Virus record (IMG/VR): IMGVR_UViG_3300040801_004532
Coordinates: 1-64,000 of that record
DNA: 64,000 bases
Direction: 5' to 3' (one strand)
The notes beneath the pieces are model-generated. The model saw only the letters and a program-made list of their open reading frames with translations, made no database searches and was not told where the DNA came from. Shown piece after piece: positions 40,710 to 56,206 of this stretch (the first letter of the stretch is position 1; the number at the start of each line of letters is the position of its first letter). Made by a program: the position numbers and the translations under genes.

Positions 40710-41093
40710 TTACCTCTTCTTTTTGATTTTTTGTTCCAATGTCGAATTAAACATTTCCATGATTTTCTTATCTACTTCCTCAGCAATCTTTTCTGACATA
40801 ATATCTATTATAGATTTTCCCTCTATATAAATATCACTAGCAGAGATAGTATTTGAAAATGCCATAGAATCATCCATAGAAAAAGAAACAAACCCCTCAT
40901 CTTTTTCTCCTGTGGCATTACTAATCCAATCAACCTTCCCTTTTCCTTGGCATTTTCTACAAAAAGGCGTGATGATATAATTAGAATTTTGATCTACATC
41001 TTTTTCTGTTCCTTTTCCGCCACAATGGTCACATATAAGTTCGCCTTCATTGATAACAACCTTTTGACCTTTTGCATTAACCAAATCTTCCAT
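40710..41093 (-). CDS. DnaJ-type zinc-finger protein (KxDWI family)
   Basis: CDHCGGKG...CRKCQGKGKVDWI. Confidence 0.65.
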   Translation of the reverse strand: MEDLVNAKGQKVVINEGELICDHCGGKGTEKDVDQNSNYIITPFCRKCQGKGKVDWISNATGEKDEGFVSFSMDDSMAFSNTISASDIYIEGKSIIDIMSEKIAEEVDKKIMEMFNSTLEQKIKKKR

Positions 41094-41318
41094 TTATTCC
41101 GCCTTTTTTCCCACTGCTTTTTCAATCCAATCAATTTTTCCTGACCCAAGACAATGGTGACAGACCAACATAGTATTGTTTGGTACCTTTGGAAATTTTG
41201 ATGTTTTAATAAATTTTGCCCTCCTCACCAAACCACTACCACCACACGTTCTACAAAACTCCTGCCCTTCTTCAAGGGCAATGTAAGTTTTGTTATAAGC
41301 ATTATATCTTTTATTCAT
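41094..41318 (-). CDS. DnaJ-type zinc-finger protein (KxDWI family)
   Basis: CRTCGGSG...CHHCLGSGKIDWI. Confidence 0.65.
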   Translation of the reverse strand: MNKRYNAYNKTYIALEEGQEFCRTCGGSGLVRRAKFIKTSKFPKVPNNTMLVCHHCLGSGKIDWIEKAVGKKAE

Positions 41319-42708
41319 GGAAAGGCAATACCCTCGATTTATCATCAAGATCTACAAACTCATCTTTGGATAAATATTTCTTTACCAAATAATGACAATA
41401 ATCCTCATCTAAACTAGCTAAGACATTAAGGGATCTTGGGATACTATGAGCTTTAACTTTTTGTTTTCTTGTTAATTTTCCTTGGTTTAAAATCCTTGTA
41501 GCTTCTAAACATTCTCTATAAAATTCTTCTTCGTCACCAGATTCATAAATTGGATAAACACGTTCTGCAAATTCTCTCATACCTTGTTGAATATCTGTAT
41601 ATAAATCCAATGTATATAATATTGAATAGACCTTAACATCTTCCCAAAATGTATTTCTACTTGGATCATAAATCCCATCAACATTAATCTTTGAAAACCC
41701 CCACTTATCGGATAGACGATCAAAAATTCTTTGTGTCATATCATGAACAGATAGATCCTTTAAAAATCTCAGATCAAGTCTATCGCTTTTGATACTCATT
41801 TTTCTAATGTAGCCATATTCATCTGCAACATGCATAAACCTTGCGTGCATTACCTGCTTATAAATACCCGATGAATCATAAGTAATGTTCAAATCAATTC
41901 CATGTTTCTTTTTAATAACGACACTAAACAATTCATAAAACAATACATCCCTGAAATTTGCACCACCAAGAATATGAAAATTTAAATGTTTGAATCCATG
42001 TCTTATGGCTTCATTTACAAGCGGAACAATAGGAAGGATATAAATCACACATGGGATTGACATATCACTAGACATATTCGCAACAATTCCGCCTGTACCA
42101 TGATACTTAAAATGTCTGAACATATCATGGTCTCTTAGGAGCTTCGTATAAATTTCCCAAAGTTTGGGGGTACGAAAATGATGAACATATATAATCTTAT
42201 CACGAACATGATCAGGAAGAGATTTGGCTTTTTCATATGACTCAAGATTTAATTTATAAACATCATCAAAATTATGAAAAATCTTGCAACCAGGTCCCGG
42301 AGGAATATCAAGAATAAATGCTTTATCATAAACATCTGCATACTCAACAAGCCACTCATAATATAATTTATAAAGCAAATCAGATTCTGCTCTTGTTAAT
42401 CTTCCAATTGAAATCTGAAAGCCACCACTATCTGCAATCAAATTACAATTATCAAAGAGTCCCCACTCTCGACACTTCCTATATAAATCACCTTCTCGTT
42501 GTTTATATTTATCAAATTTTTTCTTTCCGCCAAAATCCTGACCAAATGAATGAAGAAACCCGGCAGTTGTTTTAGAAAGAAAGTTTGATATGTCTTCTCT
42601 CGTAAAATTATTGTTAAATCTCCCTCTTCGTCCTTCGATAAAATTTTCAAGAATAGTTGCAAGCGTCTCAAATCCTGCTAGAACATATCCACTTCTTTTA
42701 ACATCCAT
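41311..42708 (-). CDS. TGT-fold guanine transglycosylase (DpdA-like; probable DNA 7-deazaguanine insertase)
   Basis: ADSGGFQ, LDIPP, FHILG, YDSS in the order of the TGT/DpdA catalytic elements; queE nearby. Confidence 0.7.
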   Translation of the reverse strand: MDVKRSGYVLAGFETLATILENFIEGRRGRFNNNFTREDISNFLSKTTAGFLHSFGQDFGGKKKFDKYKQREGDLYRKCREWGLFDNCNLIADSGGFQISIGRLTRAESDLLYKLYYEWLVEYADVYDKAFILDIPPGPGCKIFHNFDDVYKLNLESYEKAKSLPDHVRDKIIYVHHFRTPKLWEIYTKLLRDHDMFRHFKYHGTGGIVANMSSDMSIPCVIYILPIVPLVNEAIRHGFKHLNFHILGGANFRDVLFYELFSVVIKKKHGIDLNITYDSSGIYKQVMHARFMHVADEYGYIRKMSIKSDRLDLRFLKDLSVHDMTQRIFDRLSDKWGFSKINVDGIYDPSRNTFWEDVKVYSILYTLDLYTDIQQGMREFAERVYPIYESGDEEEFYRECLEATRILNQGKLTRKQKVKAHSIPRSLNVLASLDEDYCHYLVKKYLSKDEFVDLDDKSRVLPFHE

Positions 42709-43140
42709 TCAAATACCCCCCACCCTCCCCAATTCTGTCATTCCCTTTGAGTATGGACTTGTGGCAGCACCACTAGTTCCCGAAATCCCAGCAAATCCAA
42801 TTGATCCAGATACTCCCGATGGTCCAACACATCCACTTGTTCCAGATGTACCCATATAACCAGAAGACCCATTATAATCTGGAGGTTCAACTCCAGTAGC
42901 TTGTTCAATCCAATCTAATTTTCTTTTTCCCCAACATTTAGGGCAAATTGAAATATTCCTACATATTGATCCATCCTTCCTCGCTAATTCAATTGCTCCA
43001 CGCCCACCACAAATGGGGCACACAATTTCTCCCAAATCTTCATCTAGTTCAATTTCGCTTATTCCAGCACCATTGAAAGGGGTGCGTTTAGAAATAACTT
43101 CACCATTTAGATATTTTTTAAAATTATCTAATATTCCCAT
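42709..43140 (-). CDS. DnaJ-type zinc-finger protein with GTS-like tail
   Basis: CPICGGRG...CPKCWGKRKLDWI followed by Gly-X-Y triplets. Confidence 0.65.
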   Translation of the reverse strand: MGILDNFKKYLNGEVISKRTPFNGAGISEIELDEDLGEIVCPICGGRGAIELARKDGSICRNISICPKCWGKRKLDWIEQATGVEPPDYNGSSGYMGTSGTSGCVGPSGVSGSIGFAGISGTSGAATSPYSKGMTELGRVGGI

Positions 43141-43151
43141 TTATTCACCAC

Positions 43152-43676
43152 CTACAATTTTTCTATTACAATACTACCACCAGTGGACGAATCAAATTCC
43201 ATTGCACATTTTAACGCCAACTCAATTCGTTTTACTGGTTCCATATCATTGTTTAGTTCTTGTATTGCTTTCAAAGATCCCAAAGCATATGTACCGCCAG
43301 ATCCAATAGCAGTAAATTCATCCACGGTACTAATATGAAAATCAACCAAAATTTCATATAGCTGCTTTTTGTAACCAATAATAAGATTGGATACCCACGC
43401 TTCAGTTTGGTCGTCTGTAATAGCAAGACATCCCTTTTCTCGACAATGATTTCTCAGATAATCAGGGAAGTCAAGTATATCTTCTGGAGGGTCAAAAAAT
43501 TTAGAATGTAAAATTTGACACCCCCTTGCGCTGCCAACTGCACCCAGCAAATAATTTCCAACTCTAAATATTTTTTGGGCTTTAATGGGACGAATGTCAC
43601 CGCCTTCAGACGATCCTCTGGTATCTGCTCCTATATAAACATTTCCCTTATGTTTTATTCCTACAACACATGACAT
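43152..43676 (-). CDS. Ntn-hydrolase, HslV/proteasome-beta-like peptidase
   Basis: MSCVVG...IGAD...KIF...AIGSG..YALG. Confidence 0.8.
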   Translation of the reverse strand: MSCVVGIKHKGNVYIGADTRGSSEGGDIRPIKAQKIFRVGNYLLGAVGSARGCQILHSKFFDPPEDILDFPDYLRNHCREKGCLAITDDQTEAWVSNLIIGYKKQLYEILVDFHISTVDEFTAIGSGGTYALGSLKAIQELNNDMEPVKRIELALKCAMEFDSSTGGSIVIEKL

Positions 43677-43677
43677 T

Positions 43678-44478
43678 TTATTCCCCCTTTAATTTCATAT
43701 CATCTCTCATCCTAAGACATTTTGCTAGATCAAATGAGTAGTCGTATATATGTAACCCTTTACTTGAAGCAAATATTTCTCCATCTTCAATCCCAATCTC
43801 TTCTGTAATATATTCCTTTAATAATTGAATACCAGCAAGATTTGCAGGGAATCCTCCCCATAGGTCCCACGATCTGAAATATGGATAAAAGTGAAGTTTT
43901 CCATCTTGAATCCTTGTATCAATGTGTCTTAAACATGGAGGATCTTGTAAAAGCATATCAGTTGGATGTGCAACTTGTAAAACCATTTGATTATTTCTGT
44001 AACCTTTATTTTTATATGTCCAAATTAACAGTTCAATTTGATTTAAATGCCAATGACCGGTAGAATAAATAATGCCAAGATCAATTAATTCCTCAATTTC
44101 CTCTATGAGAATATTTGGCCAATGACCCTCCTTATATAAATGTAAGGGATAATTTATTGGATACGCAGTTAACCTTTGACCATATGTATATGATTCCCCA
44201 TCTTTTAATGCTCCAGTCATCAAATACGGAAGGTATTCATCTAGATAATCATCAGCTACAGGGTTTGGAATATTATGGTGTGCTTCTATCTGAGGTAAAA
44301 GAGGTTTTGACCAGGGATGTTTAATATGAACATTTACCCAATCAAATTCTAATCTTTTTTGCCCAGCATATGATCCCCGGTCAATTTTAAATACTGAACC
44401 TTCTTCAAGGATTCTAAAAAGAGTTTGAAACCAAGCATCTCCTAAATCTCTGGCTTCAATCGTTTGAACATTAAGCAT
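43678..44478 (-). CDS. thyA: Thymidylate synthase-family enzyme (archaeal-like ThyA, or dNMP hydroxymethylase)
   Basis: YTYGQR, DPPCL, FRSWD, FPAN, LHIY. Confidence 0.8.
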   Translation of the reverse strand: MLNVQTIEARDLGDAWFQTLFRILEEGSVFKIDRGSYAGQKRLEFDWVNVHIKHPWSKPLLPQIEAHHNIPNPVADDYLDEYLPYLMTGALKDGESYTYGQRLTAYPINYPLHLYKEGHWPNILIEEIEELIDLGIIYSTGHWHLNQIELLIWTYKNKGYRNNQMVLQVAHPTDMLLQDPPCLRHIDTRIQDGKLHFYPYFRSWDLWGGFPANLAGIQLLKEYITEEIGIEDGEIFASSKGLHIYDYSFDLAKCLRMRDDMKLKGE

Positions 44479-44490
44479 TATCTATTCCTT

Positions 44491-44817
44491 TCATGATATA
44501 ATTTTAGAATCTTCTTTTGGGGCTTCAAGGGTAAATTCATCAAGTGATTCTCGAGTTTTCTCATCTATAAGAAAACCATAAATTTCGTCAACCTTTAAAA
44601 CCTTCAAGAGGGATTTCCCAATTACCACATCCATTCCACCACGAGGATGCATAACAAGAATATCTCCTTTATTTATACCTTCAACTTTTAATCCAACAGA
44701 TAGAACCTTGCCATATGCTTGTGGATCCTGAACAGTTTCCGGAAGGATTATTCCTCCTGACGATTTACTTCTCTTCAGAACTTGTACTATAACTTTGTCT
44801 TCGATTGCTTCGATCAT
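44491..44817 (-). CDS. groES: Co-chaperonin GroES
   Basis: DKVIV...SSGGIILP...G.VLSVG...GD. Confidence 0.85.
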   Translation of the reverse strand: MIEAIEDKVIVQVLKRSKSSGGIILPETVQDPQAYGKVLSVGLKVEGINKGDILVMHPRGGMDVVIGKSLLKVLKVDEIYGFLIDEKTRESLDEFTLEAPKEDSKIIS

Positions 44818-45124
44818 TTTGTTTAGCTCCCTTCTTTTGCTTCTTTTTTTTACGAATGATTTTTTCTTTCAACTTCTCCAACTTTTCTTCTTCTTTTTGT
44901 ATTGCTCTTATAGATTGGACTTTTTTTCTTCTTTTCCTATCGCTAGGTTTCTCATAATACATCTTTTCTCTAAACTCTTTGGCAATACCACTCTTTGAAA
45001 ATTTCTTACGAAAGCGTTTTAAAAGTTCTTCATCACTCTCGTCTTTTCTACGAACTACACATATTCCTGTGTGTTCATCAGGATAATAATGTTTATGATA
45101 AGTCATAGCTTGAATATTTGCCAC
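44765..45124 (-). CDS. rpsU: Ribosomal protein bS21
   Basis: V.....ES.E..LKRFRKK..K.GI..E.R...YYEKPS..KRRK. Confidence 0.85.
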   Translation of the reverse strand: MANIQAMTYHKHYYPDEHTGICVVRRKDESDEELLKRFRKKFSKSGIAKEFREKMYYEKPSDRKRRKKVQSIRAIQKEEEKLEKLKEKIIRKKKKQKKGAKQNDRSNRRQSYSTSSEEK

Positions 45125-45133
45125 CTCCCTTCA

Positions 45134-45805
45134 TTATACAAATCCATAAATTATATGGTCTCTCGATGAAAAGCTGAAACCATATTTCTCGCAAATATCA
45201 AAAACAGCTGCAGAATTTTTAATGAGATCTACCCTGGTTGTTCCCTCAGGCATAACCCAAACTCTATGGTTCCAACTAAGGTTTTTATAATTAGCGGAAA
45301 TATTGGCCAAAAACTTTTCAATCAACGGACTATCATCATATACAACTTTTATATAAACTTCTGGAAAACTTTCTAGAAGTTTAACATTTTGTAGTGCTGA
45401 TGATAGATCACTATCATTAAAGATTTTTGGCGAATAAACATATCTAACATGTTTATCAGGAGAAACCTCTTGAATTAACTGGAACAATTTATACCCATTT
45501 GATTCAACATTTGCAATTGGATAGTCCAGCTCATTAAGTAATAAAGCGGCTTCATCAAAATGTTTTGGAACCGTTGGTTCTCCACCTGTAATCAAAAGTC
45601 CTGCATTTGTTCTATAAATTGTATCTTGAATATCTGAAAGAAGATGCGGAGCCTCTGCTGAGATTCTCATTTTTACAGAGGTATCACACCAAGGACATTT
45701 CAGATTACAAGTCTTAAATCTGAGAATGATCATTGGTCGCCCGCTATCAATTCCTTCGCCTTGCCATGAAATAAAATTTTCGATTAATTTAACACTTTTA
45801 CTCAT
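45134..45805 (-). CDS. queE: 7-carboxy-7-deazaguanine synthase (radical SAM)
   Basis: E.F.SWQGEG..G....LR...CNLKCPWCDT, ITGGEP, ESNG, SPK. Confidence 0.85.
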   Translation of the reverse strand: MSKSVKLIENFISWQGEGIDSGRPMIILRFKTCNLKCPWCDTSVKMRISAEAPHLLSDIQDTIYRTNAGLLITGGEPTVPKHFDEAALLLNELDYPIANVESNGYKLFQLIQEVSPDKHVRYVYSPKIFNDSDLSSALQNVKLLESFPEVYIKVVYDDSPLIEKFLANISANYKNLSWNHRVWVMPEGTTRVDLIKNSAAVFDICEKYGFSFSSRDHIIYGFV

Positions 45806-45840
45806 TTATAATTTCCCCTTTCGTTTATTGTTTGTTCTGA

Positions 45841-48800
45841 TTATATAGTTAATAGTTCCGACTTTTCTCTTATATCAGTCAGCGGCTTAAGCATTAGCTC
45901 ATGCCTATCCATAAATGAAAATCTCAATGCTGCGTTTAAATCAGGGACAAAAAATGCTGGTAGCCTCCTTTCTTCATCGGGAATAGCAATTACCTCAAGT
46001 TTATTACCACGCCCAATAAATTTATCATATTTAGCTCTTATTTTTTCTCTTTCTTTATCATCTTGTATTTTATCAAAATCAATTCCTCTAACCCAGAACA
46101 TGTATGCCTTATTTCCAGGTCTATGAATATCATACATTATATTATTCCAGGCTTCCATAGCTCTAACGCCTTGTGGAATTGTTTTATAATCGCTTAGTTC
46201 TTTTCCCCAAGTTACAGGTCGAGCAATAGTTTTATCGCCTTGAATAATAAGATCTTTAAATTCCTTTTCTTTTCTTGACACATATTTTATAACTTTTGAT
46301 AATTTAAATTTTTCATCTTTCAGGATCAGCTCTGAAAGCTCTGATAAAAATTCTTTTGATTTACTTGGATAATCTGATCTTTTAATTTCAACACCCATAT
46401 AATTAATCTTATCAACTTCTTTTCCTTCGTTATTTATAACACGAATTGCATATCTCTTTTTAGCCAAAAACAATCCTCGTGAAATAACAAGCTCATTTTT
46501 TAATTCAAGGCGATTAAATTCTAAATTAACATTGTGTCGTTTAACCATTTCAACAATTCGATGTTTATTTAAAAATTCTTCAACCTCTTTACACCATCCT
46601 TGAATTTTCTCGACTGATAGATCTTTATTTTTAAACCCTCCAAAATAACAGAAAATTGAATCTGTATCGCCTGTTATTATATATTCGTTATTTCTTTCGG
46701 GCATTTCATCTGAGTACATTTCTTTTTTGGTTAAGGGATTGGGGTGCTCGTATTTTTCATTCTTGTCTATGTGCCTCATAAAAGCATCACCTTCAATAAT
46801 TGATGTTTTTAATGCCTCTTGTCCGGATAATGTTACGGCCCCTGCTACATCAATATCAAAAAATCTAAATGCCTTATTAGCTACAACTCCATATAATGTA
46901 TTTGCAAGGACCTTATAAACTAACTGTCTTGTATAAAAGAAATTTTCGGAATCTTTATCTTTTTCTTCAATCGCTTGAAACATCTCTTTTTTATATCTTT
47001 TTCTTGTTTTCATTAACATATCAACGACCTCACCAAAAACAGAAAACTCTTTTTCGTGTGGTAAAAAGAAACATCCGTTGATTGTATAAACTAAATTATT
47101 TTCTTTAACTTTTTTCATTAACTGGTCAGGAGTAATAACCATCTCTTTCTTTTCAAACAATGGATCATATACAACCTCAATTTTCTCCGGAAGATTTTCT
47201 GGATGATATGCTAATTCATAACCAAGATGTGAGTCTTTAGTTTTCATTACATAACTATTCACGCCAATGTTATATGTAATCATAATACTTGGGTATAGAG
47301 ATGCAAAGTCAAAGTCTGTAATCCAATCATATGCGCCTGGAATTGGACTAAAAACAAATGCCCCCGGATATTTTCCTTTTTCAGTATGAGGGTCAGAATT
47401 TTTTGAACCGAAACCTTTATTTCTAAGATATGATACCATCAACGAATCAATTTGACCAAATGATGATACAGAATCAAATGAAGTATTACAAATTATTCTT
47501 AACTCATTAAGCAGGTTAATATGAGCTAATTTATCATCAAGTTGCTCAAGGAGATCTGTATCCCGAATGTTATATTCAATTGTCTTATTAAACATTTTCC
47601 AATACATTTCATTGAAAGGTAAGGGCAGATCTATTTTTGTAATCCCCAACTCATGTTGTGCAATAAAACCAAGTTTATAATTTTCCATTTTTGTAAATGT
47701 AAATGTCCTATATAAAAAGTCCTGATCAATTGCTACACAACCAGGAATATGGCAAACATATTTTGAACCGTCAACATAAAACTCGCCAAATCTATTGAAC
47801 ATTGATTGCTTTAATCCAATCTTTGGCATTCTGTTATATATATATTCAAGGTCGAATGAAATACAGTTCCATCCTGCAATAAAATCAGGATCTTCACTTT
47901 TAAAATCTTTGGAAAATTCCCTCAACAGTTCCTTTTCTGTATTAAAAATTTTAAAATCAACCCCATCAATTTTTTCAATCGGTTCTGTTTTATTGTCAAC
48001 TACATAATGTGTTTTGGTTTTATTGAATATTGTTGTAAGCATATTAATTGGAAATTTGGCCTCTAGAGGACGGGGGAAAACTCGCTCATCCCCTGTATCT
48101 ACCTCAATATCGAAAAACATAATATTTGATTTAACTTTTTTAGCTTCGCCTTTACTGTAATGATAATAATCCATTGCATGTTTCGCTGTTATTCTGACAT
48201 CACCTTCGTATGTTATATCAGGATCTAAATTATATCTATCTCGGTATTTCACCTTAATTTGATTTAAATGATCATAAGGAACAATCTTCTTTCCTTGATG
48301 TCCCTTTTTTATTTGATAACAAACATAATCGTCATTCTCCGTATGATATATTTTTCTATTGTCCTTATCACGAAATATATAAAGGATTTGACTTGTTTTG
48401 TTAAGAAACTGAACATCAATCAATCTATAATCATCTGAATAAAATTGCTTTGGAATCTTATATCTAAATATTCCAGCCCCCATAGATTCAATATCATGAT
48501 GCGAAACCTCTATGTCTTTTCCACTCAACATTGTAGAAATTTGCCCCATCGCTTCTTCAAATTTTGGTTCCCAAACTCCCAAATTTCTATTGACAAACGA
48601 AGGATGAACTATTATGACAGTTTTAAACCCATTCCATTCTGTAACCTTGCCATGAATTTTTGTTATGCCTGATTTTCCCATTCCAAATGCAGACATAGGA
48701 CTTCCGCCCATAATAACAACAAGTTTTGGATTACAAATCTTTGTTATATTTATACAATTGATTTTGCAGTTTTTAATAACATCATCATCTGGGTTGCCGG

Positions 48801-49080
48801 TTGTTCCATCATCATTTAAGGTTTGACAAAGGACAACATTTGTAAGAAGGTAATTGCATTTATTTAAACCAAATTTATTAAAGTATTTTCTAAATAATTT
48901 CCCAGCCTTCCCGACTAATGGATTACCTTTTTTAACTTCTTCTTTACCAGGATTTTCTGCGATAAAAACTACATCTACTTTTGATAAATCATCTTCACAA
49001 TTTGTTTCAAGAATACACGAAGGGAATTCTAAAAGTTTACACTCGGCACAATTTGCAAAAGACTTTTTTATTGAAAACAA
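45841..49080 (-). CDS. Family B DNA polymerase with N-terminal family-4-like uracil-DNA glycosylase domain
   Basis: UDG: CAEC, AENPG, P.VGKAG, TNVVLC, HPS. Exonuclease: DIE, N...FD, YN..D. Polymerase: DFASLYPS, K..AN..YG, GDTDS, KKRY. Confidence 0.9.
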   Translation of the reverse strand: MFSIKKSFANCAECKLLEFPSCILETNCEDDLSKVDVVFIAENPGKEEVKKGNPLVGKAGKLFRKYFNKFGLNKCNYLLTNVVLCQTLNDDGTTGNPDDDVIKNCKINCINITKICNPKLVVIMGGSPMSAFGMGKSGITKIHGKVTEWNGFKTVIIVHPSFVNRNLGVWEPKFEEAMGQISTMLSGKDIEVSHHDIESMGAGIFRYKIPKQFYSDDYRLIDVQFLNKTSQILYIFRDKDNRKIYHTENDDYVCYQIKKGHQGKKIVPYDHLNQIKVKYRDRYNLDPDITYEGDVRITAKHAMDYYHYSKGEAKKVKSNIMFFDIEVDTGDERVFPRPLEAKFPINMLTTIFNKTKTHYVVDNKTEPIEKIDGVDFKIFNTEKELLREFSKDFKSEDPDFIAGWNCISFDLEYIYNRMPKIGLKQSMFNRFGEFYVDGSKYVCHIPGCVAIDQDFLYRTFTFTKMENYKLGFIAQHELGITKIDLPLPFNEMYWKMFNKTIEYNIRDTDLLEQLDDKLAHINLLNELRIICNTSFDSVSSFGQIDSLMVSYLRNKGFGSKNSDPHTEKGKYPGAFVFSPIPGAYDWITDFDFASLYPSIMITYNIGVNSYVMKTKDSHLGYELAYHPENLPEKIEVVYDPLFEKKEMVITPDQLMKKVKENNLVYTINGCFFLPHEKEFSVFGEVVDMLMKTRKRYKKEMFQAIEEKDKDSENFFYTRQLVYKVLANTLYGVVANKAFRFFDIDVAGAVTLSGQEALKTSIIEGDAFMRHIDKNEKYEHPNPLTKKEMYSDEMPERNNEYIITGDTDSIFCYFGGFKNKDLSVEKIQGWCKEVEEFLNKHRIVEMVKRHNVNLEFNRLELKNELVISRGLFLAKKRYAIRVINNEGKEVDKINYMGVEIKRSDYPSKSKEFLSELSELILKDEKFKLSKVIKYVSRKEKEFKDLIIQGDKTIARPVTWGKELSDYKTIPQGVRAMEAWNNIMYDIHRPGNKAYMFWVRGIDFDKIQDDKEREKIRAKYDKFIGRGNKLEVIAIPDEERRLPAFFVPDLNAALRFSFMDRHELMLKPLTDIREKSELLTI

Positions 49081-49154
49081 ATAAATGCCTCCTCAGTTTA
49101 GTTTTGATTTTGTTCCGATTAAAAAAATAATTAACCATTTAAAAAAACATTCAT

Positions 49155-49174
49155 CTATATATATTAATAAGTGA
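49155..49174 (+). promoter_or_regulatory. Putative early promoter
   Basis: CTATATATATTAATAAGTGA. Confidence 0.55.
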
Positions 49175-49221
49175 AAGTAGGTTGGGCGCCTAATATTTAT
49201 TACCGAAGAAAGGAGAACAGC

Positions 49222-50043
49222 ATGACCGAACATGAAACGACAGCAATTACCAAGCAAGACGTGGAAAAGGTTGTGTCAGTGATTTCGATCAATGACGCAG
49301 AAAAAATCCTCGGAATCAAAAACGAGCCTCCGTACGACATCAAAAAGCTCCTCCATGAGTATCACATCGGTTTTGAAGTTCTCATGGAAAACCGCGAGTT
49401 CAAAAAGCTTCGCCCTTTGACGGATGCCAAGAATATCATTCTTCGGCACCTCATCGAGAACCAAGTCGAAGAGAACGGCCGGTTCGACATGGAAGGGGTT
49501 ATTCCGTTTGAAGATGCTTGCACGTCTTGCCACGGCACCGGGGAATTATATAAATTCTTCCGGCGAGTCGTCACCCTCGATTGCAAATTCTGCGAGGGCG
49601 AGGGTGAAGTTACTTTAGAGTGCCGGGCCTGCGGCGGATCCGGTCGCTATATACGAGAGTACGGCGACCTGAAGATCGATGTGGCTTGCAAAAAATGCGA
49701 CAAAGATCCCGAAACCGGCGACCCCCTTGGGGTTGTGACTTACAAATGCCGGCGGTGTCGGGGAAAAGGAACATTCCGGAAAACCGTGATTGACAGCAAG
49801 ATCAAATCCACGACCCATTGTAAGGTTTGCAAGGGCCGGGGGTTCATCGTTCCGGATGATCGGTTCCCTCCCCGAAGGGGTCAAACGATTCAAATTGCCA
49901 ACCCGGTCATCAAGGAAAGCGACCTTGAATCAATCGGAAGCGTCATCAAGGAAAGCAAGCCGGAAGCGGCCGAAATCTCCATCGAGGAAGACAACCTGGA
50001 ATCACTCGAAAGCGCCATCAAGGATTCCCCCGCAAGCGAATAA
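49222..50043 (+). CDS. Multi-CxxCxGxG (DnaJ central domain-like) zinc-finger protein without a J-domain
   Basis: Six CxxC units; AAGGAG SD; GC-richer. Confidence 0.7.
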   Translation: MTEHETTAITKQDVEKVVSVISINDAEKILGIKNEPPYDIKKLLHEYHIGFEVLMENREFKKLRPLTDAKNIILRHLIENQVEENGRFDMEGVIPFEDACTSCHGTGELYKFFRRVVTLDCKFCEGEGEVTLECRACGGSGRYIREYGDLKIDVACKKCDKDPETGDPLGVVTYKCRRCRGKGTFRKTVIDSKIKSTTHCKVCKGRGFIVPDDRFPPRRGQTIQIANPVIKESDLESIGSVIKESKPEAAEISIEEDNLESLESAIKDSPASE

Positions 50044-50091
50044 TTAATCTCTGGTGCCCAACCAGGCAATGAATGGAGGAGCATTTCAAAG

Positions 50092-50634
50092 CTATTGTAA
50101 CTCAATAGTCGAGAAATGCTCCTCCATTAGTTTTTTAACAGACATTTTTTCGCTTTTTATTTTTTTCTGTTTTTTTAACTTTTTCTTTTTTGGTTTCTCA
50201 ATTCCCAATGTATCGAAAACCATATCACGTTCATCTGACTTTTCAATTATATCACATAGTAAATATAAATCATCATTTTTCAAATAGGGAATTTTTTCCC
50301 TTAATTTTTCATATAAAATAACCCTTGGCTTTCTTGGATAAAATGTTATATCTCGCCTAGTTATCCGGAAATCACGAACACATCTTTTTATAAAATACAA
50401 TAACTCTTCTCTGCTTAAATATCTTAAATTAATATCATTAAAATATCTATCTAAATATTTATTCAACGGACCATTCTTTAAAAACATTGAAATAACAAAT
50501 GTGTGTGTAATCGGAGAATTATATTTTAAAATATCAGGAGTTATAACCTTACCATTCTCATCTGTTTTTTGTTTTGGTATCTTAGTTTCTCTTCTCCCGT
50601 CAAACAACCAGTTATTAAAAGTTTTGAATGGCAT
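50092..50634 (-). CDS. Hypothetical replication-region protein (possibly clamp-loader small subunit)
   Basis: 180 aa; functional guess from context only. Confidence 0.45.
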   Translation of the reverse strand: MPFKTFNNWLFDGRRETKIPKQKTDENGKVITPDILKYNSPITHTFVISMFLKNGPLNKYLDRYFNDINLRYLSREELLYFIKRCVRDFRITRRDITFYPRKPRVILYEKLREKIPYLKNDDLYLLCDIIEKSDERDMVFDTLGIEKPKKKKLKKQKKIKSEKMSVKKLMEEHFSTIELQ

Positions 50635-50636
50635 TA

Positions 50637-50909
50637 TTAATAATCCTTTAAAAATCTCAATAAAATTCCATCACGCAAACCTTTATTACCACAATTATGA
50701 TTAACTAAAAAAGTATCGTCTGATAAATCAACTTTGATCTTTATATTGTATATATCTAATTTGTTAGGTTCACTATTATCTTCTCCGGCTCCAATCTGAC
50801 TTCTTAAAAAATTTTCAACAATATTTGGGACTGCCTCTTTTTTCATATTTGTTGAAATATCAAAACTATCTTTGTTAATATCATATTTCAACTCAACAAA
50901 CAAATTCAT
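50637..50909 (-). CDS. Hypothetical protein
   Basis: 90 aa; start overlaps the glycosyltransferase stop. Confidence 0.55.
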   Translation of the reverse strand: MNLFVELKYDINKDSFDISTNMKKEAVPNIVENFLRSQIGAGEDNSEPNKLDIYNIKIKVDLSDDTFLVNHNCGNKGLRDGILLRFLKDY

Positions 50910-51904
50910 TAAATTGCCCCTTTCATTTCATTACAAATCACATCATAGAATTTATTCATTTGTTCCTCACATAACAGTTTTGGAACATCAACCTTTGGCA
51001 CCCAATCAACATTTGCATTTAGAATATAATCTATTTTTCTCATTAGTTCTCCGGAGGAGTTATACAAGTATTCATCAGGCAGTAGTTCTGGATATGCTAA
51101 ATCTCTCCTAGCCAAAGGGATACAATTATTCATTACAGCATCAACAATTTGATAACCAAATGTATCCTCATGAGCTGTAATCAATAATATTTTTGACGAT
51201 CTCAAATTATAAAAATAATCATACCATGTATATGAAATAGGTCTTTTAATTTCACAGAAAGTATCCTCAACCAATTTCTCAAGAGATTCATCAATCTTCT
51301 GTGGGTTTGATCTTGAGGCTGACATAATTTCAATTGTTTTTTCTATTTCAGGAAAATCAAATTCTAGTGGGGGAAATGGTAAATAAGATACCATTATATT
51401 CCTCCAGTGTGCATCATTTCCAAAGACACTATGGCCACCAACTCTTAGTTTATTTTTATGATAACAACTTCCAACAAAAATCTTATCAAACATTCTACAT
51501 ATGCTTGATTCAATTGGAAATTTATCAGACCTAACTTTTCCATAATAATCTAAAACATTCAATGATGTTGCATGACAAAAAGCATACATTTTCTTTGGGC
51601 GTTTGTGAAATAAAACATGACCAAAAATTCCTGGAAAGCTAATATCCGCCCAAAATAAAATATCATCATCCTTCAAATCTAAATTCATATACTCGTTGAT
51701 TTGAGCTGTTTCAAGTTCAATGGCTTGATTTATTGGAGAGAACATATCTAATCCGCTTCGTCTATGAACCATCTCCTTAATTTTATCTCTCCCAAGAGTT
51801 AGTACCTCAAACCCTCGTTTTTCAAATTCTTCTGGCAGTTTCCAGAACCACCATTCAGAATATCTTAAAGCTGATGGAAATTGTGGTACAAAGATTATTC
51901 TCAC
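50909..51904 (-). CDS. GT-B (GT4-like) glycosyltransferase
   Basis: C-terminal TAHEDTFGYQIVDAV...CIPL....LAYPE...EYLY donor-binding region. Confidence 0.75.
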   Translation of the reverse strand: MRIIFVPQFPSALRYSEWWFWKLPEEFEKRGFEVLTLGRDKIKEMVHRRSGLDMFSPINQAIELETAQINEYMNLDLKDDDILFWADISFPGIFGHVLFHKRPKKMYAFCHATSLNVLDYYGKVRSDKFPIESSICRMFDKIFVGSCYHKNKLRVGGHSVFGNDAHWRNIMVSYLPFPPLEFDFPEIEKTIEIMSASRSNPQKIDESLEKLVEDTFCEIKRPISYTWYDYFYNLRSSKILLITAHEDTFGYQIVDAVMNNCIPLARRDLAYPELLPDEYLYNSSGELMRKIDYILNANVDWVPKVDVPKLLCEEQMNKFYDVICNEMKGAI

Positions 51905-52107
51905 TTTCCCTTCCTTTCATTGATTAAATCTGGAATAGGTAAAGGCTTTCTATATTCACAATATAAACAAAGGTCTTGCATATTTACCACTTTTTCAGCA
52001 TTACACTTACCTTTAAAAGTACACCAATCATCCCTTGTTATCTGAAGTGAAACCCAACCTCCTAACCTTTTTACAGACCCCCCTGTACAAGTTGGACCAT
52101 TCGACAT
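51901..52107 (-). CDS. Small Cys-rich protein
   Basis: 68 aa, GGAGG SD. Confidence 0.5.
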   Translation of the reverse strand: MSNGPTCTGGSVKRLGGWVSLQITRDDWCTFKGKCNAEKVVNMQDLCLYCEYRKPLPIPDLINERKGK

Positions 52108-52339
52108 TTGAAAAACCTCCTACCCATTTAGAATAATTATATAGATTAAATAAAATTAAAACTGCCATTTGAATTAAGAGGAACCAATGAGTTTTTTGAT
52201 AAAAAATATATGCTTGGCACAAAAGACTAATATTAAACACCATGAAACCAGCAGGGCGCTTCTCTCCAATGAGATAAAGTCCAATTAATGTTGTGATAAG
52301 GGAAACTATTTCTAACCACCTTAGAAGATCCATTTGCAA
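52028..52339 (-). CDS. Small membrane protein, PnuC-like half transporter
   Basis: Three hydrophobic segments; G.YL...K...GF...Q......N.Y....W pattern. Confidence 0.5.
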   Translation of the reverse strand: MQMDLLRWLEIVSLITTLIGLYLIGEKRPAGFMVFNISLLCQAYIFYQKTHWFLLIQMAVLILFNLYNYSKWVGGFSNVEWSNLYRGVCKKVRRLGFTSDNKG

Positions 52340-52791
52340 TATCCTTCATAAAGTATATATTTCTTTTCATATTTCCAAAGGGATTTTTGACTGGGGTAAA
52401 TTTTATTGAGATAGTCTTCTTTTACTGTTGGGAAAGCTACCTTATGAACATAATGAGCAATCATATTAACCGAGTAAAAAATCACATCTTCTTTTGAGCG
52501 TCTGGCCAATGATTCTCCAATCGCTCCAAACTCTCTATGATCCGGTTGATATTCATAAACAGGATCTGGAAAATAAAAGGTATTGTTTTGACCTAGAAAT
52601 CGGTCTGGAATTTTGTCTTCAAAAATAGTGGTTACTTGAAAATTTTTGGCTAGATTTTCTGTTTCTCTTCTTCTTTCATCTGAAGTACTCTTTGGATAAA
52701 TAACAACAGTTGATCTACTTGAAGTTAAAACCTCAAAACAGCCAATTAATTCATCATCTGGATGTGGTGCAACAATGACAATTTCGCTCAT
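52321..52791 (-). CDS. PIG-L/LmbE-family N-acetyl-sugar deacetylase
   Basis: VAPHPDDE..G, R..E, PDH, Y.SQ. Confidence 0.8.
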   Translation of the reverse strand: MSEIVIVAPHPDDELIGCFEVLTSSRSTVVIYPKSTSDERRRETENLAKNFQVTTIFEDKIPDRFLGQNNTFYFPDPVYEYQPDHREFGAIGESLARRSKEDVIFYSVNMIAHYVHKVAFPTVKEDYLNKIYPSQKSLWKYEKKYILYEGYCKWIF

Positions 52792-53841: not shown

Positions 53842-53918
53842 CGGGGCGTGGCGCAGCCTGGTAGCGCGCCTGCTTTGGGAGCAGGAAGCCGGAGGTTCAA
53901 ATCCTCTCGCCCCGACCA
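53842..53918 (+). tRNA. tRNA-Pro(UGG)
   Basis: Cloverleaf; CCTGC-TTTGGGA-GCAGG; CCA end. Confidence 0.95.
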
Positions 53919-53957
53919 CCCAATTTTAATTTTAAAAAACATAAAGGTCGAATAGTT

Positions 53958-54203
53958 ATGGTGAGGGTCATCCATAGGAATTGCAACAAACCAGCTTTTT
54001 ATTTTAAAAGCCGATTGGATATTGGGGATATTATATATGCCTCAAATATAATTTTCCTGGATGGATCAACTCCAGAACCGGACACCCCTATGATTTGTGG
54101 TTCATGCAACCAAATGATTTTATCAGGCGAATTAGAACAAGAAGGTTGGACCGACTGGTTTATGGTCGAAGAATTTCACACATTTGAAAACAAGAAAGGA
54201 TGA
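53958..54203 (+). CDS. Hypothetical protein
   Basis: 81 aa with HxxC/CxxC. Confidence 0.55.
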
Positions 54204-54207
54204 GAAA

Positions 54208-54474
54208 ATGTCGTTGTTTGCAAAGAAGAAAATGACCCATGCTGAAATCGTTGCTCCATTAAAAACCATGGCTGAAACTCTATCAAGCTATATAAAAGAT
54301 CAAGCAGAAACCATTGGGGAATTGAATGTAAAAAAGAGAGAGATCGACAATCAGATTGAATTTTCAAATGAAGAAATTGAAAAATCAAACCATACAGTTG
54401 AGCAGATTAAGAAAATGGTTAACCTTCCCAAAATCAAGAAAATGCCGGCTGATTCGGTTCCTTCGGATGAATAA
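54208..54474 (+). CDS. Coiled-coil hypothetical protein
   Basis: ORF from ATG 54208. Confidence 0.55.
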   Translation: MSLFAKKKMTHAEIVAPLKTMAETLSSYIKDQAETIGELNVKKREIDNQIEFSNEEIEKSNHTVEQIKKMVNLPKIKKMPADSVPSDE

Positions 54475-54501
54475 CAATATGCCTGCGTGGCGATTAAATT
54501 C

Positions 54502-54558
54502 TTATATTCGAACCCTAAATTATTTTAGAACAAAAAAATAAAAGGGGTTCGACTATAA
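54502..54558 (+). promoter_or_regulatory. RBS-sequestering hairpin with late promoter motif in its loop
   Basis: TTATA-T-TCGAACCCT pairs with GGGGTTCGA-C-TATAA; loop contains TTTAGAACAAAA. Confidence 0.65.
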
Positions 54559-55328
54559 TGATTTGTGAATATTGTAAAAATAAACACGATGGATCATATG
54601 GATCGGGGAGATTTTGTTCTTCAAAATGTGCCAGGGGGTTTTCTACATCAAAGAAAAGAAAAGACATTAACAAAAAAGTGTCGGAAACTCTTAAAGGATA
54701 TAAAACAATTCCTGGCGGAAAAGTTAAATTATGCGATTATGGTTGTTGTAAAGAAGCAAAATTTCAATTGAAAAACAAAAAATGGTGTTGCTCAGAAAGC
54801 CATAATAAATGCTCAGCTGTTAGAAAGAAAAATTCTAAAGGTTTGACAAAATCGCATAAAAATGGGCGTCCTGCTTTTCCAGAAGGAGCTTATTTAAAGG
54901 GGCATGAGTCATTCAAAAAAAATCTTAAAGAAAAATATAAAAAGTTAAATTTTATTGATAAACCTATAGCAGAAAAACGAAAAATTATATTAAAGGATCA
55001 AAACAATAAATGTGCCATTTGTAATATTGAACAAGAATGGAATGATAAACCTTTAATTTTCCATCTTGATCATATAGATGGCAACAGAAAAAATTGGAGT
55101 AGAGATAATCTAAGATTTATCTGTCCCAACTGTCATAGCCAAACAGAAACATATTGTAGGGGAGGTAATAAGAACATATCAAATAAGCAGCTTAAAAAAT
55201 TACTAATAGAAACAAACTTTAATTTTACAAAAACTTTAGAATTAGCAAACTTATTTCCTGGTGGTTATAACTGGAACCGTGTTAAAAAAATAGCAAGTAA
55301 AATGTGCCAGGGTGATGGAATTTGGTAG
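54558..55328 (+). CDS. HNH homing endonuclease
   Basis: MICEYC...GSGRFCS..CA N-terminus; CAIC...HLDHIDG...N...NLRFICPNCHSQT. Confidence 0.9.
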   Translation: MICEYCKNKHDGSYGSGRFCSSKCARGFSTSKKRKDINKKVSETLKGYKTIPGGKVKLCDYGCCKEAKFQLKNKKWCCSESHNKCSAVRKKNSKGLTKSHKNGRPAFPEGAYLKGHESFKKNLKEKYKKLNFIDKPIAEKRKIILKDQNNKCAICNIEQEWNDKPLIFHLDHIDGNRKNWSRDNLRFICPNCHSQTETYCRGGNKNISNKQLKKLLIETNFNFTKTLELANLFPGGYNWNRVKKIASKMCQGDGIW

Positions 55329-55392
55329 ACATGTATGTTTTAGAAGCATATGCCGTAATGGCGTGGGAGTTCAAGTCTCCCTCCTGGCACCA
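55306..55392 (+). tRNA. tRNA-Leu(UAG)
   Basis: Long variable arm; TAG anticodon; CCA; overlaps the HNH 3' end. Confidence 0.9.
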
Positions 55393-55416
55393 AATCAAAT
55401 GAAAGTGAAAACAAAA

Positions 55417-55872: not shown

Positions 55873-55917
55873 TTTGTAATCAGTAAGTCGGGGGTTCGAC
55901 TCCCTCCTCGGGCTCCA
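55841..55917 (+). tRNA. tRNA-Thr(UGU)
   Basis: ACTGA-TTTGTAA-TCAGT; CCA. Confidence 0.95.
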
Positions 55918-56116
55918 AAAAAAAGAAAGGATTGAATTATGAATCCAGATGGGTATCATTTGGCATCAACTATATTCCTTCTGGTAAATGGGATTTGGTG
56001 GGGTAAAAATACTCCAATAAATCTTTTAATAAAAACTATATTCTGGAGTCTTGGTATATGGGGGGTAATTATTTGCCTTATTGATTTTGGATTGCTAACT
56101 CCTTAATTTAGATAAA

Positions 56117-56193
56117 GCCCCCGTAGCTCAGCGGAATAGAGCATCTGACTTCTAATCAGAGGGTCGCAGGTTCGAATCCTGCCGGGGGTACCA
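56117..56193 (+). tRNA. tRNA-Arg(UCU)
   Basis: TCTGA-CTTCTAA-TCAGA; CCA. Confidence 0.95.
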
Positions 56194-56206
56194 CCAAAAC
56201 AAGGAA

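What the first reader, a model, noticed from the sequence alone, without database searches (positions are those of the whole stretch)
41311..52791. Candidate pathway for sugar-modified 7-deazaguanine in phage DNA
Seen in the replication region: a TGT/DpdA-fold enzyme (41311-42708), QueE (45134-45805), a GT-B glycosyltransferase (50909-51904) and a PIG-L deacetylase (52321-52791). Established: QueE plus DpdA-type enzymes place preQ0-derived bases in phage DNA, and GT plus PIG-L pairs add GlcNAc and then deacetylate it (mycothiol, bacillithiol, GPI). From memory, the GT C-terminus (TAHEDTFG...DAV...CIPL...DLAYPE..P.EYLY) closely resembles GTDC1/QTMAN, the queuosine-tRNA mannosyltransferase; this needs confirming. 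No GUN-anticodon tRNA lies in the window. Inference: a deazaguanine (or another base) carrying an amino-sugar, which I do not know as a described DNA modification. folE, queD and queC are not in this window.
Basis: partly seen in the sequence, partly recalled or inferred. Interest (0 to 1): 0.85.

Follow-up and report, generated by a model that had tools for sequence, protein, structure and literature searches.

The report
Sugar-adding enzymes in phage deazaguanine pathway
A large uncultured phage carries, next to its genes for putting 7-deazaguanine into DNA, a glycosyltransferase and a sugar deacetylase that sit in 7-deazaguanine gene clusters in about ten other, mostly unrelated, phage lineages, which points to a sugar-bearing modified G that has not been described in DNA.

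Summary
All four genes are real and lie at the stated coordinates. They are a DpdA-like base-exchange enzyme, QueE, a GT-B/GT4-like glycosyltransferase and a small PIG-L deacetylase.

The rest of the preQ0 pathway lies elsewhere in the 248-kb genome: FolE2, QueD and QueC.

The key new evidence is comparative. A profile of this glycosyltransferase (GT) finds none of the phage's four other GT-like genes. It does find homologues inside 7-deazaguanine clusters of six cultured phage lineages (BUDD/X1, BCSR5, ACP17, Phosso, BUCT-ZZ01, PA5oct group) and three metagenomic ones.

The PIG-L partner recurs directly beside the GT in four further lineages. In one contig it is fused to DpdL, a deazaguanine T-fold enzyme.

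So the link between GT, PIG-L and the deazaguanine pathway is well supported. The chemistry, the sugar, the acceptor atom and the target (DNA or tRNA) remain inferred.

The recalled closeness to GTDC1/QTMAN is not specific. The nearest solved structures are BshA and MshA, the GlcNAc transferases that work with PIG-L deacetylases.

GUN-anticodon tRNAs lie just outside the window, so a tRNA target is not excluded.

I found no paper describing a glycosylated deazaguanine in DNA.

The parts
41311..42708 (-). DpdA-like member of the TGT superfamily (465 aa); proposed to exchange guanine for a 7-deazaguanine base
45134..45805 (-). QueE, radical-SAM 7-carboxy-7-deazaguanine synthase (223 aa)
   Evidence: phrog_2076 at 1.3e-31. 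NCBIfam QueE models are the top hits, though below their cut-offs. QGEG and C33-x3-C37-x2-C40 motifs are present, and the only PDB sequence hits are QueE 5tgs and 6nhl. It clusters with the QueE of all six cultured comparison phages.
50909..51904 (-). GT-B/GT4-like glycosyltransferase (331 aa) of a family tied to 7-deazaguanine clusters
52321..52791 (-). PIG-L/LmbE-family metal-dependent deacetylase (156 aa), partner of the glycosyltransferase
   Evidence: VAPHPDDE at residues 8-15 and PDH at 83-85. Pfam PIG-L at 1e-4, below the cut-off. The Atlas structure has TM 0.79-0.82 to clusters that are 100% PF02585. Homologues beside the GT occur in BUDD and BCSR5 (tblastn 1e-15), L019 (Pfam 31.1 bits, above the cut-off), L039 and L044.

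Best explanation
The four genes are part of one phage pathway for modifying guanine in DNA.

**Shown by homology.** The phage encodes FolE2, QueD, QueE and QueC, which together make preQ0. Only QueE is in the window. It also encodes a divergent DpdA-like transglycosylase.

**Inferred from established DpdA biology.** The DpdA-like enzyme swaps guanine in phage DNA for the 7-deazaguanine base after replication.

**Inferred from conserved gene neighbourhood and a gene fusion.** The GT4-like enzyme is a tailoring enzyme of this pathway. It transfers an N-acetylhexosamine, most likely from UDP-GlcNAc or a related UDP-HexNAc, onto the deazaguanine moiety. The PIG-L enzyme then removes the acetyl group and leaves a free, positively charged amino-sugar. 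This is the BshA/BshB and MshA/MshB logic.

**Open questions.**
- The attachment site is unknown. The exocyclic N2, as in the natural product huimycin, is one precedent. The C7 substituent or C7 itself is the alternative.
- It is also unknown whether the sugar is added to the free base or to DNA.

**Expected role.** Protection of phage DNA from restriction and other nucleases.
For: **1. Gene identities.**

**2. Pathway completeness.**
- QueC lies at C1:90579-91151, with the SGGADS PP-loop and a C-terminal Cys cluster.
- QueD lies at 178228-178635, with the CxxxHGH motif.
- FolE2 lies at 200148-200951, scoring 219 bits.

**3. Specific association of the GT family with deazaguanine clusters.**
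- tblastn of the BUDD homologue finds only 18 of 50,697 phage records, which fall into 6 lineages.
- In each lineage inspected, the GT lies within a few kb of QueE, together with FolE, QueD, DpdL, a TGT-like gene or a subset of these.
- The family profile links all of these GTs to the window GT, at E 1e-33 to 2e-4.
- The same profile ignores the four other GT-like genes of this genome.
- Distant metagenomic members show the same neighbourhoods:
  - L039: QueD-QueE-QueC-PIG-L-GT-FolE.
  - L044: FolE-[PIG-L+DpdL fusion]-GT-...-TGT.
  - L042: DpdL-GT.

**4. The PIG-L-GT pair recurs** in the window clade, BUDD/X1, BCSR5, L018/L019, L039 and L044.

**5. Nearest solved structures.** The GT's closest matches are BshA and MshA, which are UDP-GlcNAc transferases that work with PIG-L deacetylases.

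**6. Experimental hint in a relative.** PA5oct carries the GT family beside a relative of the window's DpdA-like protein. Its virion DNA resists restriction enzymes with G in their sites, and it is sensed as G-modified, chemistry unknown (PMC12191111).

**7. Chemical precedent.** Huimycin is GlcNAc on N2 of a preQ0-derived base, added by a GT4-family enzyme encoded with FolE/QueD/QueE/QueC (PMC7439116; bioRxiv 10.64898/2026.04.15.718813).

**8. Possible donor supply.** The genome encodes a UDP-GlcNAc 2-epimerase scoring 317 bits.
Against: - No chemical or sequencing-signal data exist for this uncultured phage. Donor, acceptor and target are all inferred.
- In the window clade the GT and PIG-L genes lie 8-10 kb from the DpdA-like gene, inside a syntenic replication module. 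Within-clade co-occurrence is therefore weak evidence.
- The cultured comparison phages mostly pair the GT with DpdL and lack QueC. This phage has QueC and no DpdL. The acceptor may therefore differ between lineages, or the site may be common to all deazaguanines.
- preQ0 has no obvious O-nucleophile.
- Two distant GT contexts showed no recognisable deazaguanine genes: L019 (a fragment estimated at 17% complete) and L043 (5 kb).
- The window GT and PIG-L fall below Pfam gathering scores.
- The complex prediction for DpdA plus GT gave no answer.
Confidence: 0.55

Rival explanations
1. The target is tRNA rather than DNA. The TGT-like enzyme inserts the deazaguanine base at position 34 of GUN-anticodon tRNAs, phage-encoded or host. 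The GT and PIG-L enzymes then decorate it, giving a phage counterpart of the glycosylated queuosines of animals.
For: The genome encodes 29 tRNAs and a tmRNA, in an array starting 1 kb from the PIG-L gene. These include Asp-GUC (71975), Asn-GUU (73407 and 73797) and His-GUG (79235). QTMAN orthologues are among the structural matches of the GT. The phage also invests in translation genes: S21, tmRNA and a suppressor tRNA.
Against: - The best solved match of the TGT-like protein is the DNA enzyme DpdA, not a tRNA TGT. There is no Pfam TGT hit and no PUA or tRNA-binding domain was detected.
- Relatives of the cluster (DpdA3 phages) have fully G-substituted DNA (PMC10516641), and PA5oct DNA is G-modified.
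- The QTMAN similarity is generic GT4.
- I did not search for the queA/queG genes needed to build the queuosine cyclopentenediol that QTMAN glycosylates.
Confidence: 0.12
2. The GT and PIG-L enzymes make a free, huimycin-like glycosylated 7-deazapurine metabolite that acts as an inhibitor or signal during infection and is never installed in nucleic acid.
For: Huimycin and dapiramicin show that FolE/QueD/QueE/QueC plus a GT4 enzyme make N2-glycosylated preQ0 derivatives. Two GT-bearing phage clusters also carry a phosphoribosyltransferase, as toyocamycin-type nucleoside pathways do.
Against: A TGT/DpdA-type gene accompanies the GT in most lineages: BUDD, BCSR5, ACP17, BUCT-ZZ01, PA5oct, L044 and the window clade. 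The 2026 genome-mining study finds that validated secondary-metabolite clusters lack DpdA. The genes sit in replication modules next to the polymerase and helicase.
Confidence: 0.1
3. The GT and PIG-L enzymes act on something unrelated to deazaguanine. Candidates are a 5-hydroxymethyl-pyrimidine made by the thymidylate-synthase-like enzyme, a protein, or the host envelope. On this view their neighbourhood to QueE and DpdA only reflects the layout of replication modules.
For: The window holds a TS-like gene (43678-44478) with the catalytic Cys and the uracil-type Asn, and a B-family polymerase fused to a UDG domain. UDG-polymerase fusions are linked to glycosylated-T genomes (PMC13697223). The phage has a separate glycan gene cluster at 92-107 kb. 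A dCMP deaminase and MazG are present.
Against: - The association of this particular GT family with FolE/QueD/QueE/DpdL/TGT genes recurs in about ten lineages with different polymerases and gene orders. It is often immediate, with overlapping or abutting ORFs.
- PIG-L is fused to DpdL in L044.
- BUDD-type QueE occurs in only 131 of 50,697 phage records, so repeated chance adjacency is very unlikely. This is an inference, not a formal test.
- No TS-like gene lies in the inspected stretches (6-8 kb on each side of the GT) of the cultured phages.
Confidence: 0.08

Closest known systems
Phage 7-deazaguanine DNA modification systems (DpdA1-4 with FolE/QueD/QueE/QueC, DpdL, DpdM, DpdN; Hutinet 2019, Cui 2023)
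   Same: The base biosynthesis genes are the same and a TGT-superfamily insertion enzyme is present. The cultured comparison clusters carry DpdA3 (phrog_10773) and DpdL with the LxxxHRHxF motif.
   Different: None of the eight described derivatives carries a sugar, and the Cui 2023 main text does not mention a glycosyltransferase. The window's DpdA-like protein has no tblastn match in 50,697 phage records. It may therefore be a further subfamily. This phage has no DpdL or QueF.
BshA/BshB and MshA/MshB (bacillithiol and mycothiol): a GT4 GlcNAc transferase followed by a PIG-L/LmbE deacetylase
   Different: Sequence identity is only 11-13% and the margin over other GT4 enzymes is small. The acceptor here is presumably a deazapurine or DNA, not malate or inositol phosphate. 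The PIG-L protein is unusually short (156 aa).
Huimycin/dapiramicin biosynthesis (HuiG, a GT4-family enzyme that puts GlcNAc on N2 of a preQ0-derived base)
   Same: The cluster combines FolE/QueD/QueE/QueC with a GT4-type enzyme, and the product is a glycosylated 7-deazaguanine.
   Different: It makes a free actinomycete metabolite, with no DpdA, no deacetylase, and O6-methylation first. Homology between HuiG and the phage GT was not tested.
GTDC1/QTMAN, the queuosine-tRNA mannosyltransferase
   Same: It has the GT-B/GT4 fold and acts on a 7-deazaguanine derivative in nucleic acid. Orthologues appear among the Foldseek hits (E 4e-6 to 4e-5).
   Different: It is no closer than generic bacterial GT4 enzymes. 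No DUF3524 domain was detected. QTMAN glycosylates the cyclopentenediol of queuosine, and I did not check whether this phage can make that group.
T4 alpha/beta-glucosyltransferases and other phage DNA glycosyltransferases (5hmC, 5hmU, 5-hydroxycytosine glycans)
   Same: These are phage-encoded GT-B enzymes that decorate a modified base to evade restriction.
   Different: They act on pyrimidine hydroxyl groups. None is known to act on a purine analogue, and no sequence relationship was detected.

Membership tests
TGT/DpdA superfamily | TIM-barrel TGT fold | tested here: met
TGT/DpdA superfamily | Catalytic Asp in a DSGGFQ-type motif | tested here: met
   D93-S94-G95-G96-F97-Q98 is invariant or nearly so across 30 homologues. 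That this is the TGT active-site motif is from my own knowledge.
TGT/DpdA superfamily | Match to the curated Pfam TGT model (PF01702) | tested here: not met
   No hit at E<=0.01 for the protein or the genome. The only hit is phrog_887 at 3.5e-5.
Described DpdA subfamilies (bDpdA, DpdA1-4) | Detectable sequence relationship to a member | tested here: inconclusive
   There is no tblastn hit in 50,697 phage records. hhalign to the BUDD TGT-like protein gave probability 10%, aligning only the HxLG and YDS motifs. The profile hits only the PA5oct-type 540-aa protein, at 2.4e-5.
Described DpdA subfamilies (bDpdA, DpdA1-4) | Guanine exchange in DNA | not testable with these tools
   This needs an enzyme assay or nucleoside MS.
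QueE (CDG synthase) | Radical-SAM cluster motif and QueE-specific N-terminal motif | tested here: met
   QGEG at residues 15-18 and C33xxxC37xxC40. PDB sequence hits are QueE only. phrog_2076 at 1e-31.
QueE (CDG synthase) | NCBIfam equivalog cut-off | tested here: not met
   The best is TIGR03963 at 55.9 bits against a cut-off of 260. This is a divergent phage form.
GT-B / GT4 glycosyltransferases | Two-Rossmann-domain GT-B fold | tested here: met
GT-B / GT4 glycosyltransferases | C-terminal EX7E-type motif | tested here: inconclusive
   The HMMER alignment to 5i45 places D247 and D255 under the two Glu residues. E246, D247 (nearly invariant) and D255 are conserved in the family.
GT-B / GT4 glycosyltransferases | Pfam Glycos_transf_1 match | tested here: inconclusive
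   The window protein has none. 11 of 30 clade members match weakly, with a best E of 0.0013. The BUDD and BCSR5 homologues pass the cut-off at 45.7 and 42 bits.
GTDC1/QTMAN | N-terminal DUF3524 domain and specific closeness to GTDC1 | tested here: not met
   No DUF3524 match in the Pfam scans. QTMAN orthologues rank 5-26 with TM 0.50-0.65 and 12-14% identity, no better than YqgM, WaaS or WbnH.
PIG-L/LmbE deacetylases | Fold and the AHPDDE zinc/catalytic motif | tested here: met
   VAPHPDDE at residues 8-15. TM 0.79-0.82 over 153-155 of 156 residues to PF02585 clusters.
PIG-L/LmbE deacetylases | Second His motif (HxDH) and the Pfam cut-off | tested here: inconclusive
   The sequence has QPDH at residues 82-85, so the first His is replaced. 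Pfam scores 23.2 bits against a cut-off of 28.2. The L019 homologue passes at 31.1 bits.
GlcNAc transferase + deacetylase pairs (BshA/BshB type) | UDP-GlcNAc donor and de-N-acetylation of the product | not testable with these tools
   Support is indirect only: the GT-PIG-L adjacency and BshA/MshA as the top structural neighbours.
DpdL-type clusters (proposed dDG pathway) | DpdL T-fold protein with the LxxxHRHxF motif | tested here: not met
   A DpdL profile and a motif scan find nothing in the 248-kb genome. DpdL is present in all six cultured comparison phages and in L042 and L044.

The most novel reading that the evidence does not exclude
A previously undescribed class of DNA hypermodification: a 7-deazaguanine carrying a hexosamine (or, where PIG-L is absent, a hexose or HexNAc). 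It would be made by a dedicated GT4-like family (about 2,200 sequence clusters) that has spread through the deazaguanine clusters of many jumbo and T4-like phages. These include the cultured phages PA5oct, ACP17, BUDD/X1, BCSR5, Phosso and BUCT-ZZ01. It would also explain the unidentified modified G of PA5oct, and possibly why ACP17 DpdL plus DpdA alone gave no product in E. coli.
Probability: 0.5. Interest if true: 0.9.

Novelty: new variant of a known kind. Interest (0 to 1): 0.8.

Why it matters
**What would be new.** Eight 7-deazaguanine derivatives are known in phage DNA, and none is glycosylated. All known glycosylated DNA bases are pyrimidines. A sugar-bearing deazaguanine would be the first glycosylated purine analogue in DNA.

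**What it would connect or explain.**
- It would link the tRNA (mannosyl- and galactosyl-queuosine), natural-product (huimycin) and phage-DNA branches of deazapurine chemistry.
- It would give a concrete candidate for the unknown G modification of the therapeutic-interest jumbo phage PA5oct.
- It would probably affect restriction, CRISPR and modification-sensing defences, and how well such genomes can be sequenced.

**Why it is testable now.** The GT family occurs in several cultured phages.

Tried and rejected
- **Nucleotide and protein searches against cultured phages.** Megablast of the region against 50,697 phage records found nothing. tblastn of the DpdA-like protein also found nothing.
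- **Family scans of the GT and the DpdA-like protein.** Pfam and NCBIfam gave nothing for either, and PHROGs gave nothing for the GT. PDB sequence searches gave only a marginal GT1-family hit.
- **ORF at 50092-50634.** I considered it as a pathway member because it always flanks the GT. Its nearest named Atlas clusters carry the phage clamp-loader family, so it is probably a replication gene. I rejected it as a pathway member.
- **N-terminal extension of QueC.** I considered a roughly 100-aa extension. It is probably an artefact of taking the first start codon, because the QueC domain begins near Met92.
- **TS-like gene as a dCMP hydroxymethylase.** I rejected this because it keeps the uracil-type Asn. 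Whether it is a TS or a dUMP hydroxymethylase remains open.
- **Genes absent from the genome.** DpdL, QueF and FolE type I are absent. FolE2 is present.
- **Complex prediction.** DpdA plus GT gave no answer and is evidence neither way.
- **Supplementary tables of Cui 2023.** They were not available.
- **Phage X1 paper.** It says nothing about DNA modification.
- **Literature.** Six searches found no report of a glycosylated deazaguanine in DNA. The library lacks most subscription-journal papers, so this does not prove that no report exists.

Full report
**Setting.** The window is the first 64 kb of a 248,136-bp IMG/VR virus record. The record is linear and CheckV estimates it at 79% complete. 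The only sequencing run found to hold the region is a freshwater-sediment metagenome. The phage is a T4-like jumbo type:
- It has a T4-type portal, a DnaB helicase and a B-family polymerase.
- It has no nucleotide-level relative among 50,697 deposited phage genomes.

*DpdA-like protein (41311-42708, 465 aa).*
- It escapes Pfam TGT but hits phrog_887 'queuine tRNA-ribosyltransferase'.
- It has 611 metagenomic homologues; the 120 listed are 61-93% identical.
- DSGGFQ, HILGG and YDSS are invariant or nearly so in an alignment of 30 homologues.
- An AlphaFold model built on that alignment has pLDDT 83.8.
- Its best solved match is the DNA preQ0 insertase DpdA, 7ui4. Foldseek gives E 8e-5, the only hit below 1e-3.
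- Phage TGT/DpdA proteins are its best viral matches.

*QueE (45134-45805).* It is a divergent but clear QueE.

*Glycosyltransferase (50909-51904).*
- It has no family hit in any HMM library.
- It models confidently (pLDDT 88.6) as a GT-B enzyme.

*PIG-L protein (52321-52791).*
- It has the VAPHPDDE motif.
- Its Atlas structure superposes on PIG-L clusters at TM 0.79-0.82 over its whole length.

**Rest of the pathway.** The phage encodes all four enzymes for preQ0.
- QueC at 90.6 kb.
- QueD at 178 kb.
- A FolE2-type GTP cyclohydrolase at 200 kb.
- No QueF, FolE type I or DpdL was found.

**GTDC1.**
- QTMAN orthologues do appear among the Swiss-Prot structure hits, but only at ranks 5-26.
- Their scores are the same as those of ordinary bacterial GT4 enzymes.
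- No DUF3524 match was found.

**The decisive evidence is comparative.**

*Within the phage's own clade.* In the 16 IMG/VR loci the order is conserved: PIG-L, GT, clamp-loader-like gene, PolB, QueE, S21, GroES, TS-like, HslV, DpdA-like, DnaB. That is ordinary synteny and proves little.

*In cultured phages.*
- tblastn of the GT against cultured phages hit Xanthomonas phages BUDD and X1 and Burkholderia phage BCSR5.
- Using the BUDD protein as a bridge added Acidovorax ACP17, Sinorhizobium Phosso, Synechococcus BUCT-ZZ01 and the PA5oct group. That makes 18 records in 50,697.
- In every lineage the GT lies inside a 7-deazaguanine cluster:
  - BUDD: FolE, a PP-loop protein, PIG-L-like, hyp, GT, TGT-like, DpdL, QueE.
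  - BCSR5: PIG-L-like, hyp, GT, TGT-like, hyp, QueE, with FolE and DpdL nearby.
  - ACP17: QueD, FolE, hyp, DpdA3, GT, DpdL, QueE.
  - Phosso: DpdL, GT, hyp, FolE ... QueE.
  - BUCT-ZZ01: QueE, PRTase, QueD, FolE, hyp, DpdA3-like, DpdL, GT.
  - PA5oct type: a 540-aa DpdA-like protein, GT, DpdL, ..., PRTase, QueE.
- A profile of the window clade's GT hits all six directly and full-length (E 1e-33 to 8e-10; BUCT-ZZ01 at 2e-4 in two segments).
- All-against-all clustering gives GT and QueE in 7 of 7 lineages.
- It also gives a roughly 125-aa family in all six cultured lineages. This family carries the LxxxHRHxF motif that Cui et al. 2023 use to define DpdL.

*Specificity control.* The same GT profile, run with all filters off, hits no other ORF in this 248-kb genome. 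The genome nevertheless has four other GT-like genes.

*Base rate.* BUDD-type QueE is present in only 131 of 50,697 phage records. The GT is therefore an accessory of a subset of such clusters. This is how a tailoring enzyme behaves.

**Distant metagenomic members.** An exhaustive HMMER search found 2201 cluster representatives at E<=1e-3. I sampled divergent ones:
- L039: QueD, QueE, hyp, radical SAM, QueC, PIG-L-like, GT, hyp, FolE.
- L044: FolE, then a 257-aa protein, then GT, hyp, radical SAM/SPASM and a TGT-like protein. The 257-aa protein is PIG-L at residues 3-146 and DpdL at residues 150-254. This fusion ties PIG-L physically to a deazaguanine-pathway enzyme.
- L042: DpdL directly upstream of the GT.
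- L043 (5 kb) and L018/L019 (a fragment estimated at 17% complete) show no recognisable deazaguanine genes. In L019 the PIG-L and GT ORFs overlap.
- The contig carrying P0369 has a radical-SAM gene nearby, and its GT is fused to an endonuclease VII domain.

**Interpretation.**
- I regard the functional link between this GT family, its PIG-L partner and the 7-deazaguanine pathway as well supported, at about 0.85.
- That the product is a sugar-bearing deazaguanine in virion DNA is an inference, at about 0.55.
- DpdA-family enzymes insert these bases into DNA, and DpdA3 phages replace all G (PMC10516641).
- PA5oct carries the GT next to the closest cultured relative of the window's DpdA-like protein. 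Its DNA resists restriction enzymes with G in their sites, and it is sensed as G-modified, with the chemistry unresolved (PMC12191111).
- GT plus PIG-L argues for transfer of a HexNAc followed by deacetylation to a cationic amino-sugar. The genome's UDP-GlcNAc 2-epimerase shows that the phage handles UDP-HexNAc.

**The attachment site is open.**
- The GT family serves both DpdL-type clusters, which lack QueC, and QueC-type clusters such as this phage and L039. A site common to all deazaguanines is therefore attractive.
- The exocyclic N2 is such a site. Huimycin has GlcNAc on N2 of a preQ0-derived base, installed by the GT4-family enzyme HuiG.
- Glycosylation at the C7 substituent or at C7 itself is the alternative.
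- Cui et al. report that ACP17 DpdL plus DpdA gave no dDG in E. coli, and they suggest that other enzymes may be needed. The adjacent GT is an obvious candidate. This last point is my inference.

**Rivals.**
- *tRNA target.* The genome encodes 29 tRNAs and a tmRNA from 53.8 to 82.8 kb, plus one further tRNA at 164 kb. They include Asp-GUC, two Asn-GUU and His-GUG. The DpdA-like fold and the DNA evidence from relatives argue against this rival.
- *Free metabolite.* A huimycin-like compound is possible, but it fits poorly with the constant presence of a base-exchange enzyme.
- *Pyrimidine or unrelated acceptor.* The window has a TS-like gene with a uracil-type active site and a UDG-fused polymerase. 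Such fusions are linked elsewhere to glycosylated thymine. This phage may modify T as well, but that does not explain why this GT family tracks deazaguanine genes.

**Novelty.** Six searches of the held library found no report of a glycosylated 7-deazaguanine in DNA. The library lacks most subscription-journal papers. I rate the finding a new variant of a known kind. It is directly testable in cultured phages.

Noticed in passing
window 53842-63455, continuing to about 82.8 kb of the genome (G000:C1): A dense tRNA array starts 1 kb from the PIG-L gene. There are 11 tRNAs in the window and 29 in the genome. The array includes a tmRNA at 68211-68561 and a CUA-anticodon (amber suppressor) tRNA at 66784-66860. 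The suppressor hints at stop-codon reassignment or read-through late in infection.
   Followed up: partly
window 45841-49080 (-): The B-family DNA polymerase carries an N-terminal uracil-DNA-glycosylase domain (PF03167, 5e-17). UDG-polymerase fusions have been tied to phages with glycosylated thymine. Contigs L039 and L042, which carry the same GT family, have A-family polymerases that also match UDG.
   Followed up: partly
window 43678-44478 (-): A thymidylate-synthase-like protein resembles archaeal-type TS most closely (TIGR03283, 2e-31, below the cut-off). It keeps the catalytic Cys and the uracil-type Asn. It could be a TS or a dUMP hydroxymethylase. It is 62-81% conserved across the clade.
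   Followed up: partly
window 43152-45124 (-): Cellular-type translation and chaperone genes sit between the QueE and DpdA-like genes: HslV-like peptidase (43152-43676), GroES-like (44491-44817) and ribosomal protein S21 (44765-45124).
   Followed up: no
window 40710-41348, 42709-43140 (-) and 49171-50043 (+): Four small proteins have DnaJ-type CXXCXGXG zinc-finger repeats. One of them (42709-43140) also has a collagen-like repeat. Their function is unknown.
   Followed up: no
G000:C1:92143-107036 (L045): A separate glycan gene cluster holds two GT1-family enzymes, a Glyco_trans_1_2 protein, a GT-D-like protein, a UDP-GlcNAc 2-epimerase (317 bits), a Gfo/Idh/MocA oxidoreductase and a sulfotransferase. 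A papain-like protease and an ATP-dependent DNA ligase are also there. The cluster lies just upstream of QueC, MazG and a dCMP deaminase (89.6-91.2 kb).
   Followed up: partly
L044:1161-1934: A single 257-aa protein fuses a PIG-L domain (residues 3-146) to a DpdL domain (residues 150-254). It lies directly upstream of the GT and next to FolE.
   Followed up: yes
L033:1090-1551 and L034:8324-8758: The GT-bearing deazaguanine clusters of Synechococcus phage BUCT-ZZ01 and PA5oct-like phages include a phosphoribosyltransferase. This suggests that in some lineages the deazaguanine base may be converted to a nucleotide, which would be a pre-replicative route.
   Followed up: no
G003 (312,420 bp, complete, terminal repeats; L017, L022, L038): A complete relative has the GT, PIG-L, QueE and DpdA-like genes but no detectable QueC or QueD. 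The clade therefore varies in how much of the base pathway it carries itself.
   Followed up: partly
window 52028-52339 (-): A 103-aa ORF between the GT and PIG-L genes weakly resembles the N-terminus of PnuC-type nucleoside/NMN transporters (PF04973, 1.4e-5, below the cut-off). It is conserved in some clade members.
   Followed up: no
protein P0369 (contig of run ERR10503104): A 587-aa member of the GT family carries an N-terminal endonuclease VII domain. It lies near radical-SAM, methyltransferase and short-chain dehydrogenase genes.
   Followed up: no
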